This document shows, piece by piece, positions 12,934 to 53,344 of a DNA stretch of 64,000 nt; position 1 is the first letter of the stretch, and every line of letters starts with the position of its first letter. The notes under the pieces are model-generated. The model was given only the letters and a program-made list of their open reading frames with translations, was not told where the DNA came from and ran no database searches. This DNA comes from Euprymna scolopes. Its lineage: Eukaryota. The DNA lies in NCBI GenBank assembly GCA_053919585.1, contig CM132792.1, one strand, 5' to 3'. A program made the position numbers and the translations under genes.

Positions 12934-12980
12934 TACTTTCTTGGTCTTCTGGCTAAGATCCAAGGGTAGTATCTCTTCTG
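12934..12980 (+). pseudogene. 5'-fragment U2 snRNA pseudogene
   Basis: TTCTTGGTCTTCTGGCTAAGATCCAAGGGTAGTATCTCTTCT aligns to the U2 5' end TTCTCGGCCTTTTGGCTAAGATCAAAGTGTAGTATCTGTTCT, including the GTAGTA branch-point recognition sequence. No Sm site or 3' half follows. Confidence 0.8.
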
Positions 12981-13079
12981 TTTAAAGATAGTATAATGAT
13001 ATCGTTTGGTTTCTCTTCGTGCAATTCGTGCATACAATGGAAATATGTTACAGATTCTTATAAGGTTGTTGGAGATTAA

Positions 13080-17544: not shown

Positions 17545-18376
17545 AATTAGTCATGTCTCATATCCGTAATGGAATGGGGACAAAACTTGATACTAACATC
17601 AATGCTGCCAAGATTAAGCTTGTTTCCTTCAACAATTACAAAACACCTTCTCACCCACAAATAGCTATAGTTAAGGATACATTCCCTGAAAGTACTTCTT
17701 TCAAACTCCTAATACTAACGTTCACAGGAAACATGACTTGAAACAGATACATTGAGAGAATTGCCAAAGCTGCTGCAAAGAGGACGAGTTCTTTTTACCG
17801 TGCTAGAATGTTACTTCCGCCTTAAAGTAATCTGTACCTCTACATGGCTGTCATTCGCCCATGCATAAAGTATTGTTGTCACATTTGGGCTTGTGCATCT
17901 GCTACTTGTATCTCGCTCCTGATTTCCAAAGAGAGTTGCTCACCTGATAGATCTTGAACTGTCATCTAAGCTTCAACTTATGTCCCATCGACGAAATGTT
18001 GCATCCCTCACCTGTTCTATAAGTATTTTAATAGTGGATGTTCCGACGAACTACCAGCCCTTGTACCCCTCGACGCTAATACCCCCGACAAACCCGAGAA
18101 GCAGCTAAATCCCACCCCTGCAAAGTAGAGAACCCTAGATATGAGAAAGCCTTTTAATCTAATAGGTTCTTCCCCCAGAACTGCTAGACTTTCGAATCCC
18201 CTCCCGGGTTCCTTCTTTCCCAATAGTATTGACAATCAGAATTTCTAGTGTAATGTGAACGAACATCTCGCTGCTAAACTCCCTACTTAGTACCCCTGCA
18301 ACTTGTGCCCCCGATAATAGCCCCCTACATCAAAGTGTCACTGTGCCTTGTTTGAGGTAAAATTGTAATAAAAATA
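17545..18376 (+). mobile_element. 5'-truncated CR1/L2-group (Crack/Daphne-like) LINE with 3' end
   Basis: Reads NAAKIKLVSF, LTFTGNMT*NRYIERIAKAA, LYLYMAVIRPCIKYCCHIWA, SHRRNVASL and RTARLSNPLP, then a short 3' UTR ending AATAAAAATAA. Confidence 0.85.
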
Positions 18377-27449: not shown

Positions 27450-28390
27450 GGCAAAGTGCTATTATTTGAGACAAAATATACAAAGATACTCTATGAAGTT
27501 AGGCAGTCAAAGAAGCACGGACTCGGACAGAATTCTAAGGATTAGCAGTAAGAGCGAAGAAGCTATTTGAGTAGAAGGCTTTACGGCATCTCTACAGTAG
27601 AATAGTGGATTTTGCTAGTTGACGGGTTTGCCAAGGGAATATACGTCCAGGGAAAACAAGTGTTCGAAGTTTTCAGAGCACATTCCATTAAAATTATTTT
27701 TAAATAGGCGCAGGGATGCTACATTTTGACGGTAGGACGGAGGCTGGAGTTTGGTTACAAATGAAGAACTAATTAGGCTGGTTACTCATTTTTGGCTACT
27801 GTCCTGGAGAGAGTGACTAGTGAAAGATGCACGAGCTCAGATCTTGCAAAGAATACTCCATGCATGAGCGAACAGTGGTTTTGTCGTGGTACAGGAATCA
27901 GTCACTTTTAGGACGATAATAACAGCTCACCTTCATCCCATCGGTCTTGGCAATTACCTCAATGTATTTCTTCTAATTCATATATTTTGTGAATGCTAAG
28001 CCTGGAAGTTAAAACGAAGTACTTTAAGCTAGTGTGTCATTAACCGTAGCAATCGGCTGCTGCAAACGTTTCTTAAACAAACAAAAGAACTTAGTCTTGG
28101 GAGCATTACACATTTCCAACCATTCACAGATTGATTGCACTACATACTGGCGGTCTTCCCCTATGTTTTATCTGTCTCCTTAGATACGTGTTCATTCGTT
28201 TTCTTTTCGGATCTGTTATAAAGCGTAGCGTTATTAGTCAATATACTTATCTCAAAAACAATTTCATCACAGAGGTAATTTATGATTATCAGGAATAAGC
28301 AAGTCCAAGACTTAACCGCTGTAATACACCTGCGTCTATATTATATTCTCTTGGCGTGCGACCATCAGGGACAAACCTGATTTTTCTGTT
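27450..28390 (-). mobile_element. CR1/L2-group LINE RT relic
   Basis: Reads IRFVPDG..REYNIDAGVLQRLSLG (NAGVPQGS.LG motif) and CNAPKTKF, with a downstream RTS.LWN-like region. Confidence 0.55.
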
Positions 28391-28399
28391 CTTTAATGA

Positions 28400-49079: not shown

Positions 49080-49591
49080 GATGGTATAACTTGACGAATA
49101 CTTAACATAATTAAATCCGTTGTAAGAAAGAAGAATCAAAGGTAATCCTCGACGGTCGTACATATAAACAATATACTATAAATGCGGGAGTACATCAGGG
49201 GTCTATCCTTGGACCTATATTATTCCATATATTCATAAATGACATCCCTGATAAAATTGACTTTGAGATGGGTATATTTACTGAATACGCCACGCTTCAT
49301 AACAGGCACGAGAAGAAAACAAATGAACACATATCTAAGGAAATGGCAAAACATCTCAAATCTGTAATCGAATGTTGACATACATGGATGATAACATTAT
49401 ATGCTGCCAGGACTAAGTTTGTATTCTTTAATAATTACAAGAAACCTTCTAATCCACTAATAGCAATGTCTAAAGATACATTACTAACAAATACTTTTTT
49501 TTTAAACTTCTCGGCCTTACATTCACATGGAACATGAGTTGGAACAGATACATTGCAAGCATTGCCAGGGCCGCTGTGAGGAAAGTGAGCT
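49080..49591 (+). mobile_element. CR1/L2-group LINE, 5' part (interrupted by the Tx1-like cassette)
   Basis: Reads IKVILDG, INAGVHQGSILGPILFHIFINDIP and LGLTFTWNMSWNRYIASIARAAVRKVS. The sequence resumes at ~53345. Confidence 0.85.
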
Positions 49592-50019
49592 GTTTATTTG
49601 CTTCCCCACGAGAGCAAATTAGGCATGATGCCGTTTTTTTATTGTGGAGAGAAGGGGGAAAGGGAATGGGGAAATCTCCTGGGAGGTGGGAAATGGGAGA
49701 TGGATAGTGAAATTCTCTTGGTATATAGGGTTGCCCCTACATGAACCAGAAACTCATTACTACAAGGGCAATGGTCTTTGCTTGCAGCATCTGCCGGAAC
49801 AGGTACTACACTTTGAGGTATTAAGTCTATATTCGAGCAAATATAAACATGAACGAAAAACTTAAGCACAACGCCAACTCAAAAGGGTGGAAAAATTGGG
49901 GTCGCTGGTCATCCTTGTCACTTTAGAACTAAACAAAAGTTTCTCTTAGCAAGAATCTTCTTCCACCATAATACCACATTCGCCCTTTTGTACTTGAGGA
50001 CGTCCTACTAAGCACCCAC

Positions 50020-50625
50020 CGGGCACAAGTAGGCACTTCCAAAACTCTGGAACTGCATTGTATGTTGTTGAGTGGAAGTGCGGTTCGGGCTAATCGCCAG
50101 GTCAGAGAGAACTCCGAATTGAACTGATGACTCGAACCTAGCATCCAACTACACGCGGCGCGGATCTCACTCTGCTGCCAACCTAATCGCGCGCATAGCG
50201 AGTTGTCGGCCCCTCCCTCAATAGATCCCTATGGAGTTTCCTACGGGTAACAGTGACAAGGTCGCTGGACGTTGGTTGCCGTTTTAGCGCGGCTCGGCAC
50301 TCTTTTAGGAAGGCAGATTCTCCCGCGGCCAGCGACGGCTCTCGATAGAGGGGCCAAGAACGAGGCCTGGAAAGGCAGCAGTAACTGCAGGGTACCACGA
50401 TTGATCTTCTTGCATATAGTGGCTCAGGAAGGCCAGACTCTCAGCGTCTCCATGACAATTCAAGTCCCGCATTCCCAAGCCTCCCTCACATGGACGTTGA
50501 ATACAGACCTCTCTACTCACCTAGTGTTTCCTTTGTCCCAAAGGAGAGAGGAAAAAAGTACGACGAGAACTTTTAAGTGTTGTTCAGGCAGGGGGAGTAC
50601 GGCCAGTCGGTAAACAATGAGAGCA
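50020..50625 (-). pseudogene. Tx1-type ORF2 C-terminal fragment (no EN or RT core)
   Basis: Reads LIVYRLAVLPLP...LLWDKG, then REVCIQRPCEGGLGMRDL (L1/Tx1 GGLG motif), then FSLTWRLARTALPL. Confidence 0.7.
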
Positions 50626-50834
50626 AAGACGTGCGTGGCGCCTCAGCTTCTTCTGATGATGATGTTGTTGCTGCTGCTGTTGTTGTTGGCGCTGCTGCTG
50701 TTGAGTCAGTGGTGAGGTTGAAATGGACATGGATGTTTGTCCATTTACACCCTGCCACCTACTTCACTGATGCTTAGTCTCTTTGGATCTTGCCGACACA
50801 AGGGCTGGTGTTGGTGATTACTTAGACTCAGTGG

Positions 50835-51985
50835 CTATTGCCACCCCCGCCGCTGGAACCATGTTTGCTTGTGGTACAAGTTGGCTTGGAAGTACTTTTT
50901 GGAGGTGTTCTTTATCATGTGGGTCTGTTTCAGGCAGAACCAGCAGTGAGGGCATTGACCCTCGACAACCACCGTCATGTTGTCTTCCTTGAACGATATT
51001 TTTGATGGGATGCCTAGAAAGCCCTCTCTTTTCACCCGCATCGCTACTTTATAGCTTCCCAGGTGAACACCGTTTTTAGAACGTGCTGGGTCCATCCGCT
51101 CCATTTCTCCAAAATTATTAAGGAAGGTTCGCGGCAGTTCTGTGCGTAGGTTAGCAGGAGCATAAAATATTTGAACCCGGGTTCTTCTCCTACACCGGTA
51201 GTAGCTTGACTCCTGCGTATTTAAGTTCTGTGTGGGAGAACTTTTCTGCGTCAACCTTGTTGGGGAGCAGTACATTGCGAAGTTCCTCTGGTGTATATAC
51301 TTGGTGGGTATATTCTGTTTCTGGAGGAGCCCAGCCATTTCCTCTTTTTTCAATCCCTTCAGCCGATTTTCCCGAATGTCCAAAGTGACGAAGGACAGGA
51401 TCTTGTCCTCCATCGCCTCCCAGTCCTCAGGTATTATCTTGAGGACGTTCCTCTCAATATATTCCTTGCACTTTGTGAGATACAAATCTTTATATTCCTG
51501 TGGGGAGAGTCTCTTTTCAGTGGTTATACCCTGTGCAGACCCTCTGTCTTGGGCGAGGGGACTTTTGTGGGATTAGATAATTGTTCTGCTTTCTTGAAGG
51601 TGTTTTGTGAGACGGGTTTCCCTTTAAGGGTTGATTCTCCTGTGTTTTTCTTGGATGTGTTCAGTACTGCGCCCTTATTTGGAGAGCTTCCATTTGGAGG
51701 AGCTTCCCCCTTCATCGTGTCTTTTGAGGCGGCTACCTCTTTGCTAGCGTTCATTTCTGGGCGGTATGCCTCTTCTTTTTGGGGTGAGCTGCCCTCGTTG
51801 GGAGTGTCTCCTCCGGTAATGTCTTTTGGAGCTGCTTCCCCTTGGTTTGGAGGATCTCCTGGGTGTTCTTCCCCAGTTTGGTAATTTGCTCCCTCTTTGG
51901 AGGAGCTGCCATTGTGGGGAGCATCTCCCCGTGCACAATCTTTTTGGGTTGCTTCCCCTGCTTTATTGTTTTCAACAACAGACAA
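50835..51985 (-). pseudogene. Tx1/L1-type ORF1 (gag-like), frameshifted
   Basis: ORF 51524-51985 has three G(D/E)xPxNGSS repeats. ORF 50835-51485 reads TRVQIFYAP...FGEM, IPSKISF and VVVEGQCPHCWFCLKQTH (degenerate CX2CX4HX4C knuckle). Confidence 0.75.
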
Positions 51986-53344
51986 AGTGAGAGTGCGGAC
52001 AGTACGCTACCAAAAAAAATTCGTCAAAGTGTTCCGGGCGCGAGAATATGTCGCCAGAAACAGCACTGCCTCGCGCGATATATGTATCAGAACAGATACT
52101 ACACTTTAAGGTATAAAATCTTTTATTCAGGCAAAAATAATCATGAACTTAGGCACAAGGCCAACTTAAAAGGGGGAAATGGGGGTAGTTGGTAATCATT
52201 GTTACTCTCGAACTATACAAAAGTTTCTCTTAGCTAGAATCTTCTTCCACCATAATACGGCATTCACCCTTTTGTACTTGGGGACGTTATGTCTTGGCCG
52301 GGAGGCTTTGCTGTGTTTATTTGCCTCCCCACGAGAGCAAATTAGGCATAGGGCCTTTTTTAATATGAAGAGGGGAAGGGAGAAGGGGAATAGGGACCAC
52401 CTCTCGAGAGGTGGGAAATGGGAGCTGGATGGTGAGAATCTCTTGGTATATAGCGTGGCCAGAAACTCATTGCCACAAGGACAATGGTCGTTGCCGGAAC
52501 AGATAATACACTTTTGTTGTATTGTTATCATAAAAGGGTGCCGTTGTATGATTGTCTCATGTTCTGTCTATTTGTGATATATTCATATCTAATTGTTCAT
52601 ATACAGTTGTGTGTGTATGTGTGTGTATGTATGTGTGTGTGTGTGTGGTACATGCATTTTGGACATACCTTCTCCATGCATCGTTGATCTTGTCCACCTG
52701 GAATACATCTCGTTCTTGGAGGGGAGACTAAAAACATGTTTTGACGAATATTCATTCACTCCAAGACGATGAATGATTTTATATAGTTTTTTATTTACCT
52801 TCCAGATGTCGATCGCAGAAGAATGGAAAGTGAATATCTTTGCTTGCATAGGTCTTATTTTCACACACGTCAGCGTTACCCCCCCCCCCCAGTGAAGGGA
52901 GGGGACGACCTGTTAAGCCGTCTGTTCTTCTCTACGTCCAAACACAAACTCCCTGATCACCTGACTCACACGTAGATCCCTATTAGCTGACCCTCATTTC
53001 CGGTAAAACGTGTCTACAATATAATTTACCATATTTCCTTCTTATATTCGACCTACTTCCTAACACTTTAAGATATTAAGTTCTTTATTCAAACCAAAAT
53101 TACAAAGTAAGTTACAACTGAACAAAACCTTAGGCACCAGGCCCACTCAAAAGGGGGATAAAAGGTGGTCGTTGGTCATCCTTTTCACTCCAGAACTAAA
53201 AAAAAAGTTTATCTTTGCTAGTACTTTCTTTCACCATAATACCGCATTCACCCTTTCGTACTGGAGGACGTTCTACTTAGAACCCAATTTTTAAAAACAT
53301 TTTTATTTGCAACACTTTGATCTTGACCCGAAGGCCTAACTCCG

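What the first reader, a model, noticed from the sequence alone, without database searches (positions are those of the whole stretch)
49592..53344. Tx1/Keno-like cassette that carries its own U2 snRNA fragments, outside a U2 gene
Seen (minus strand): the cassette opens with GGCCTTCGGGTCAAGATCAAAGTGT (53336-53312), resembling U2 stem I. The U2 segment AAAGTGTAGTATCTGTTC, which includes the branch-point-pairing GUAGUA, recurs at 52497-52514, 52089-52107 and 49797-49816, and partly at 53062-53069. Except at 52497 it follows a module-A 3' UTR; at 52497 and 49797 it precedes module B, and at 52089 it precedes the ORF1 5' UTR. Known: Keno (Tx1 clade) and Utopia elements insert in this part of U2. 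Inference: the element regenerates a portable U2-like target, so copies stack in tandem away from real U2 genes.
Basis: partly seen in the sequence, partly recalled or inferred. Interest (0 to 1): 0.78.

Follow-up and report, generated by a model that had tools for sequence, protein, structure and literature searches.

The report
Dead LINE/SINE stack on a U2 pad
A short jumping element that starts with a copy of the front of U2 spliceosomal RNA landed in an ordinary repeat, and at least five further retroelement copies then landed at the same base of that U2 piece, so this is one more decayed case of a self-renewing landing pad already seen many times in this genome.

Summary
On the minus strand, one 3,761-bp insertion (53352-49592) sits between 7-bp target duplications (AGCTCAC). 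Two paralogous empty sites in the same window confirm its borders. It opens with a diverged U2 5' head (about nt 1-35). The U2 piece AAGTGTAGTATCTGTTC (nt 30-45) recurs three times, and its first 7 bases once more. Each piece lies exactly between the 3' tail of one retroelement and the 5' end of the next.

My reading: a U2-headed SINE (head plus module B) inserted first. L1-type LINE copies (tail = module A) and other units then inserted before U2 nt 30, and each event regenerated the pad.

- The carrier is the SINE, not the LINE cassette.
- Module B is the SINE body.
- The junction lies 9 nt upstream of the published Keno/Utopia site.

Tx1/Keno membership could not be shown. The ORF1 and ORF2 remnants match APE-RT-zf-RVT LINEs whose accessible flanks carry no U2.

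Earlier notes of this scan describe the same system on other DNA of this genome. This copy is old and broken. I rate it a new variant of known kinds (SINEU, U2-homing LINEs), of moderate interest.

The parts
53353..53359 (-). Left copy of the 7-bp target-site duplication AGCTCAC in the host repeat
   Evidence: The paralogous empty sites carry this motif only once.
53312..53352 (-). U2 snRNA-like head (about nt 1-35, diverged, ends ...GATCAAAGTGT)
   Evidence: unique in the window. (alignment to U2 nt 10-34 beats 2000 of 2000 shuffles).
53289..53311 (-). 23-nt filler (TGCAAATAAAAATG...). Its start resembles the last 9 nt of module B.
   Evidence: by eye only.
53070..53288 (-). A1: 5'-truncated copy of the LINE 3' end (module A)
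   Evidence: 76.5% identical to A3 and 81% to A2.
53063..53069 (-). U2 piece AAAGTGT (nt 29/30-35), a short duplicate of the pad
52515..53062 (-). Segment C: unidentified repeated DNA with a (CA)n run. It ends ...ACAATACAACA directly before a U2 piece. Probably one or two further retroposed units.
   Evidence: (word depth 6e3-5e4). (24-nt match to the 3' UTR of the LINE in L005).
52497..52514 (-). U2 piece AAAGTGTATTATCTGTTC (nt 29/30-45)
52315..52496 (-). B1: SINE body (module B), ends GCAAATAAAC
   Evidence: 78% identical to B2.
52108..52314 (-). A2: 5'-truncated LINE 3' end abutting the end of B1
52089..52107 (-). U2 piece AAAGTGTAGTATCTGTTCT (nt 29/30-46), perfect match to U2
51986..52088 (-). 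LINE 5' UTR
50835..51985 (-). LINE ORF1, broken into two frames (51985-51524 and 51485-50835). Has a CCHC knuckle. Homologous to the ORF1 of the intact LINE in L005.
   Evidence: (P0001, 59% identical). (37% identical over 194 aa, E 5e-41).
50640..50834 (-). Spacer after ORF1, with a glutamine-codon run. The deletion that removed the APE and RT coding sequence joins here.
   Evidence: Read depth drops about 1000-fold at about 50623.
50019..50639 (-). ORF2 C-terminal remnant in three frames, equal to residues about 800-1006 of P0028 (1161 aa)
49815..50018 (-). A3: the 3' UTR of this LINE copy (module A)
49797..49814 (-). U2 piece AAAGTGTAGTACCTGTTC (nt 29/30-45)
49592..49796 (-). B2: SINE body that closes the insertion, ends GCAAATAAAC
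49585..49591 (-). Right copy of the target-site duplication AGCTCAC
17556..18367 (-). Paralogous copy of the host repeat with the site empty (junction near 17786/17775)
   Evidence: 74% identical on both sides.
27685..28393 (+). Second paralogous copy of the host repeat with the site empty (near 27896/27921)

Best explanation
A non-coding retroposon made of the first ~45 bases of U2 snRNA plus a ~190-bp body (module B) inserted into an abundant host repeat and made a 7-bp duplication. An L1-type LINE family (3' tail = module A) and the short elements that depend on such LINEs nick the bottom strand just before U2 nt 30 (...GATCA|AAGTGT...). The second strand is joined either after nt 35 or after nt 45/46. 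Each landing therefore leaves U2 nt 30-35 or 30-45 on both sides of the newcomer. The downstream copy keeps the nick site, so the pad stays usable. At least five landings (A1, C, B1, A2 and the internally deleted LINE with A3) split the head of the resident SINE and built a head-to-tail stack. Shown: the anatomy, the duplication, the empty sites, the fixed 3' junction, and the homology of the LINE remnants. Inferred: the order of events, the nick position, and serial rather than single-step origin.
For: - One insertion with borders fixed by two empty paralogs and a 7-bp duplication.
- It begins at about U2 nt 1 and ends with B.
- All three A tails, and segment C, end immediately before AAAGTGT.
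- A1 and A2 are 5'-truncated, as expected for independent target-primed events.
- The full LINE copy is bracketed by two copies of the 17-mer, 52107-52089 and 49814-49797.
- The base after CTGTTC is T before the LINE and C before both B copies. Each unit therefore brings its own continuation of the pad.
- Read layouts at 80% likeness show contigs that join the head directly to the 17-mer plus B. That is the uninterrupted SINE (joint 49804->53312, 2 contigs in X1).
- The same layouts show B tails followed by U2 nt ~23-30 onward in other copies (table 5c).
- Depth: A, B and the ORF2 end are at 1e4-1e5, ORF1 at 1e2-1e3. This is the usual 5'-truncation profile of a LINE family.
- The ORF1 and ORF2 remnants both match one LINE type.
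Against: - The family-level evidence comes from one truncated read-layout table and is thin.
- The internal copies are only 76-82% alike, so their ages and order cannot be read.
- A contig from another species label spans the B1/A2 junction at about 96% identity (table 8, record 13). B plus A could therefore be one composite unit, or the locus could be orthologous.
- The nick position is ambiguous if the tails themselves end in U2-like bases.
- Segment C is unidentified.
- The SINE's own insertion site does not resemble the pad.
Confidence: 0.68

Rival explanations
1. Single-step origin. A long read-through transcript began at the U2 start of an already stacked master array, either a loaded U2 gene or another SINE stack. 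It was reverse-transcribed from the B tail and inserted here once, so the stacking happened elsewhere.
For: The insertion starts at about U2 nt 1 and has a single duplication around all 3.76 kb. The internal copies are as diverged from each other as the flanks are from their paralogs.
Against: It needs a 3.8-kb full-length retrocopy, whereas the family is mostly 5'-truncated. It only moves the serial stacking to another locus. No second copy of the composite junctions was seen in the window.
Confidence: 0.15
2. The LINE itself carries the U2 piece as part of its own ends, and modules A and B are both parts of one Tx1/Keno-like element that brings its target wherever it goes.
For: A T (U2 nt 46) follows the 17-mer in front of the LINE 5' UTR but not in front of B. 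This suggests the LINE RNA has its own U2 leader. The Rfam U2 model aligns weakly across the 17-mer and the 5' UTR (18.9 bits). Crocodilian Tx1 families with U1 or U2 heads are published (PMC4494074).
Against: B never follows the LINE directly, only a U2 piece. B also closes the whole insertion without an A tail. Contigs elsewhere join the head straight to B. B shows no similarity to the LINE remnants. The junction is not the Keno site (PMC6136364).
Confidence: 0.1
3. The array was built by DNA-level events (unequal crossing-over, gene conversion or replication slippage) between dispersed repeats that share the 17-mer, not by repeated retrotransposition.
For: The 17-mer and the modules give many short homologies.
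Against: The units differ in kind and in their 5' truncation points. Every unit ends with an intact 3' tail, as target-primed reverse transcription predicts. The copies are 76-82% alike, not recent duplicates.
Confidence: 0.05

Closest known systems
SINEU (snRNA-headed SINEs of crocodilians; Kojima 2015, PMC4494074)
   Same: A short non-coding retroposon whose 5' head is copied from U2 snRNA. It is linked to L1/Tx1-type LINEs, some of which carry the same head. U-derived pieces recur inside composite copies. It inserts in other repeats.
   Different: SINEU copies have poly(A) tails and prefer a Mariner transposon, not their own head. Their repeated heads were explained by template switching. 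Here the head itself is the landing site, the tail ends GCAAATAAAC without poly(A), and the host is an invertebrate. A 2026 Octopus vulgaris repeat table lists SINE classes 'U' and 'U-L1' without description (PMC13282606).
Keno (U2-specific LINEs of the Tx1 clade; Kojima and Fujiwara 2004, as cited in PMC6136364 and PMC4494074)
   Same: A two-ORF LINE of the L1/Tx1 type that lands in the conserved 5' part of U2, in sense orientation.
   Different: Keno's 3' flank begins TCTGTTCTTATCAG (after nt 37/38). Here it begins AAGTGTAG (before nt 30). Keno sits in real U2 genes and destroys the target. Here the target is a U2 copy on a SINE and is regenerated. Clade membership was not tested.
Utopia (U2-targeting LINEs with a restriction-like endonuclease; PMC4640811)
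   Same: Targets the same 20-nt stretch of U2. Occurs in tandem in U2 arrays. Reptile families make 20-bp duplications and insert at U2-like sequences outside U2 genes.
   Different: Utopia encodes one ORF with an RLE endonuclease. The remnants here match APE-RT-zf-RVT LINEs with a separate ORF1. The junction differs by 9 nt.
Tx1L in Tx1D, and Tx1-Mar in Mariner-N4_AMi (PMC4494074)
   Same: Tx1-type LINEs whose target is a site carried by another mobile element, so the target multiplies by transposition.
   Different: There the carrier is a DNA transposon unrelated to the LINE. Here the carrier is a retroposon probably mobilised by the same kind of LINE, which closes a loop.

Membership tests
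Keno (Tx1 clade, U2-specific) | 3' junction at the fixed Keno site, with the flank starting TCTGTTCTTATCAG (U2 nt 38/39) | tested here: not met
   All three A tails are followed by A/AAGTGTAGTA..., that is before nt 30. Published site from PMC6136364 and PMC4640811.
Keno (Tx1 clade, U2-specific) | The reverse transcriptase groups with the Tx1 clade and Keno in a phylogeny | not testable with these tools
   This copy has lost the RT, and only ORF2 residues ~800-1006 remain. No named Tx1, Keno or L1 reference sequences could be obtained.
Keno (Tx1 clade, U2-specific) | Resides in genuine U2 snRNA genes | tested here: not met
   No U2 gene in the window. The stack lies inside a host repeat, within one duplication.
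L1 superfamily LINE (APE-RT-C-terminal zinc motif, separate ORF1) | ORF2 homologous to APE-RT-zf-RVT proteins, and ORF1 with a CCHC knuckle | tested here: met
   The remnants are 41-52% identical to residues 800-1006 of P0028. Relatives carry Exo_endo_phos, RVT_1 and zf-RVT. The best solved relative is human L1 ORF2p, E 3e-74, against R2 at 1e-22. ORF1 is 37% identical to the ORF1 in L005, which has a knuckle in the same place.
Utopia | Single ORF with a C-terminal restriction-like endonuclease | tested here: not met
   A separate ORF1 is present. The relatives have an N-terminal APE endonuclease.
SINEU-type (snRNA-headed SINE) | 5' head derived from the 5' end of U1 or U2 snRNA | tested here: met
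   The insertion starts 16 nt before GGCC..., at about U2 nt 1. The alignment beats 2000 of 2000 shuffles.
SINEU-type (snRNA-headed SINE) | Short non-coding body, many dispersed copies with target duplications | tested here: inconclusive
   B is 182-205 nt with no meaningful ORF. This copy has a duplication. B word depth is 1e4-1e5, and two contigs join the head straight to B. No individual solitary copy could be inspected.
SINEU-type (snRNA-headed SINE) | 3' poly(A) tail | tested here: not met
   Both B copies end GCAAATAAAC, followed by non-A sequence.

The most novel reading that the evidence does not exclude
This genome runs a closed loop not described in the literature I could search. A SINE spreads, as its own head, the exact landing site of an L1/Tx1-type LINE group that homes to U2 nt 29/30, a base different from the Keno and Utopia site. 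The target therefore multiplies with the parasite, and mixed head-to-tail stacks grow anywhere in the genome. This locus would be an old example whose single host-site duplication and empty paralogs prove the stacking happened on a transposed pad.
Probability: 0.5. Interest if true: 0.7.

Novelty: new variant of a known kind. Interest (0 to 1): 0.55.

Why it matters
Target-specific LINEs are thought to be limited by the small number of copies of their target gene. PMC4640811 makes this point explicitly for U2. A retroposon that carries the target as its own head would remove that limit. It would also explain how snRNA heads arise on SINEs, and why such elements pile into arrays in a very large invertebrate genome. 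This locus adds a clean structural proof: one duplication and two empty paralogs show that a whole stack grew on a transposed pad. It also shows that the landing base differs from Keno's. By itself it is a dead, diverged copy with no sign of function.

Tried and rejected
- Rfam at gathering thresholds finds nothing in the window. At relaxed thresholds only a weak end-to-end U2 alignment appears over the 17-mer and the LINE 5' UTR (18.9 bits). The head alone is too short to score.
- Pfam finds nothing in ORF1, the upstream ORF or the ORF2 pieces. PDB finds nothing for ORF1.
- A word search with ORF1 gave one Logan contig (P0001/L001), which reaches only the start of ORF2. A word search with the 99-aa ORF2 end gave nothing.
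- The exhaustive search with the 71-aa ORF2 piece gave 24 hits. None is closer than about 50% identity.
- The flanks of the relatives with readable DNA (L004, L005, L006) show no U2 by pattern, by Rfam or by alignment against shuffles.
- The most repeated relative (P0030/P0158) had no DNA available.
- A pattern scan of metagenome contigs for the 17-mer/B junction returned only chance matches in bacterial genes.
- Folding of the A and B tails shows nothing beyond shuffles.
- U2-likeness of the host repeat next to the insertion is not significant in the two empty copies.
- An apparent pad remnant inside C (AAGATCAA, 52691-52684) is not significant.
- A and B have no significant similarity to the relatives' 3' UTRs, apart from short motifs and a loose alignment of A to the end of the LINE in L005.
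Full report
**Observation.** I read 49400-53600 on the minus strand.
- The U2 17-mer AAGTGTAGTATCTGTTC is present at 52106-52090 (exact), 52513-52497 and 49813-49797 (one mismatch each). The search at up to three mismatches gave six hits in the window against 0.26 expected, and no shuffle reached six.
- The head string GGCCTTCGGGTCAAGATCAA is unique in the window at 53336-53317.
- AAAGTGT occurs five times in the cassette, each time at a unit border.
- Rfam finds no complete U2 gene anywhere in the 64 kb.

**Borders.**
- A self-BLAST of the region against the window showed that the DNA on both sides of the cassette belongs to one repeat family.
- Two other copies of that repeat lie in the window, at 18367-17556 (minus) and 27685-28393 (plus). 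They run straight through the point where the cassette sits.
- The alignment and exact coordinates show AGCTCAC once in the empty copies and twice in the filled copy, at 53359-53353 and 49591-49585.
- The cassette is therefore one insertion of 3,761 bp (53352-49592) with a 7-bp target-site duplication.
- In read layouts the host repeat has far higher depth (above 1e6 words) than anything inside the cassette.

**Anatomy, 5' to 3' on the minus strand.**
1. U2-like head, 53352-53312. It ends ...GATCAAAGTGT, about U2 nt 1-35.
2. A 23-nt filler.
3. A1, a 5'-truncated copy of module A.
4. AAAGTGT.
5. Segment C (548 bp). It is unidentified and moderately repeated, contains a CA microsatellite, and ends directly before the next U2 piece.
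6. U2 nt 30-45.
7. B1.
8. A2, 5'-truncated and abutting the end of B1.
9. U2 nt 30-46.
10. A LINE copy: a 5' UTR, an ORF1 broken into two frames, a spacer, an ORF2 remnant in three frames, and A3 as its 3' UTR.
11. U2 nt 30-45.
12. B2, which closes the insertion.

**The LINE.**
- ORF1 (216-aa piece) is 59% identical to a Logan protein (P0001).
- It is 37% identical over 194 aa (E 5e-41) to the ORF1 of an intact two-ORF LINE on L005. That ORF1 has a CCHC knuckle at the same place.
- The ORF2 pieces map collinearly to residues about 800-1006 of P0028, which is 1161 aa long. Identity is 41-52%.
- This copy has therefore lost the endonuclease, the reverse transcriptase and the last ~150 residues.
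- The relatives have Exo_endo_phos, RVT_1 and zf-RVT domains. Their best solved relative is human L1 ORF2p (E 3e-74), against R2 at 1e-22.
- This places the element among L1-type LINEs.
- I could not test Tx1 or Keno membership. None of about 860 homologues carries a name, no reference sequences were available, and all relatives are about equally distant at about 48% identity.
- The relatives whose DNA I could read (L004, L005, L006) show no U2 at either end by pattern, by Rfam or by alignment against shuffles.

**Junctions.**
- All three A tails end ...ATA(T/C)CT(T/C)A and are followed by AAGTGT. Segment C likewise ends before AAAGTGT. The 3' junction is thus fixed before U2 nt 30.
- The 5' junctions fall after nt 35 (twice) or after nt 45/46 (three times).
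- The full LINE copy is bracketed by two copies of the 17-mer, which is what a 16-17-bp target duplication would give.
- The base after CTGTTC is T, as in U2, in front of the LINE. It is C in front of both B copies. Each unit therefore seems to bring its own continuation of the pad, joined in register.
- Published Keno and Utopia insertions are followed by TCTGTTCTTATCAG, that is nt 38/39 (PMC6136364; PMC4640811). The landing base here lies 9 nt upstream.
- One caveat: if the tails themselves end in U2-like bases, the true nick could lie further downstream.

**Family-level evidence.** I laid Logan contigs of three DNA runs and raw poly(A) RNA reads on the stretch at 80% likeness.
- Word depth is 1e4-1e5 over A, B and the ORF2 end, and drops about 1000-fold at about 50623 into ORF1. 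This is the usual 5'-truncation profile.
- Two contigs of run X1 join 53312 to 49804, that is the head directly to the 17-mer plus B. This is the uninterrupted U2-headed SINE.
- Other contigs show the B tail followed by TACAAAGATC, TACCGATC or TACAC and then AAAGTGTAG.... B tails therefore abut U2 from about nt 23-30 elsewhere in the genome.
- RNA reads match mostly at under 90% likeness and on both strands, so they say nothing about this copy.
- One 286-nt contig from another species label spans the B1/A2 junction at about 96% identity. That contig is either the orthologous locus or a sign that B plus A can travel together. I could not decide which.

**Interpretation.**
- The simplest account starts with a U2-headed SINE (head plus B2) landing in the host repeat. 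LINE copies and dependent elements then landed repeatedly before nt 30 of its head.
- Each event duplicated nt 30-35 or 30-45 and so renewed the pad.
It moves the carrier role to the SINE and separates module B from the LINE.
- A single-step copy of an already stacked array remains possible (about 0.15) and would only move the stacking elsewhere. A LINE-borne pad and DNA-level recombination are less likely.

**Earlier notes and literature.**
- Notes of this scan on other DNA of the same genome describe the same system: U2-headed SINEs in tens of thousands and LINEs landing in the head. One stack lies inside a single 11-bp duplication. I used these notes as leads only.
- My own tests agree with them on anatomy. 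I did not check their copy numbers, the species or the 'Keno-like' label. The junction I measured argues against Keno in the strict sense.
- The literature I could search describes snRNA-headed SINEs in detail only from crocodilians (PMC4494074). There the head is not the target.
- A 2026 octopus repeat table lists SINE classes 'U' and 'U-L1' without comment (PMC13282606).

**Verdict.** This is a real, old and broken example of a variant of known kinds. It is of moderate interest in itself and of higher interest as part of the genome-wide system.

Noticed in passing
window 12937-12990 (+): A second, decayed U2 5' region (TTTCTTGGTCTTCTGGCTAAGATCCAAGGGTAGTATCTCTTCT...) aligns to U2 nt 5-57 with a 5-nt gap and beats 2000 of 2000 shuffles. 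It is not followed by module B. Probably another U2-headed retroposon or a U2 pseudogene.
   Followed up: partly
window 49551-49542 (-), with 17740s and 27950s in the empty copies: The host repeat carries GTATCTGTTC (U2 nt 36-45) 34 nt downstream of the insertion point. The wider stretch aligns loosely to U2 nt 9-54 (30 of 2000 shuffles as good). In the two empty copies it is not significant. Either chance or a weak secondary target.
   Followed up: partly
window 52114-51948 (-): The Rfam U2 model aligns end to end at 18.9 bits, below the gathering score of 46. It is driven by the 17-mer and by an Sm-site-like AAUUUUUUUUGG inside the LINE 5' UTR. A faint hint that the LINE leader holds more U2 than 17 nt.
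   Followed up: partly
ENA sample ERZ21867824 (no DNA available), proteins P0030 and P0158: A related LINE, about 48% identical to the ORF2 remnant here, stands in exact head-to-tail tandems with ORF1-ORF2 units every ~6.4-6.8 kb on several contigs. It also occurs singly. What lies between the units could not be read.
   Followed up: partly
window 8960-9190 (-): Several spaced motifs resemble GTGTA(A/G)TATCTGTT(C/T), about 60 bp apart. Tandem Repeats Finder reports no array. Likely chance or a coding repeat.
   Followed up: no
window 52691-52684 (-), inside segment C: GGTGGACAAGATCAA resembles U2 nt 17-30 and could mark another split pad, but it is not significant (261 of 2000 shuffles as good).
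   Followed up: partly
window 53416-53923 and 49124-49576: The host repeat is by far the most abundant sequence in the stretch (word depth above 1e6 in three DNA runs, with many RNA reads on both strands). Loose ends suggest it is a mosaic of sub-units. Its nature was not determined.
   Followed up: no
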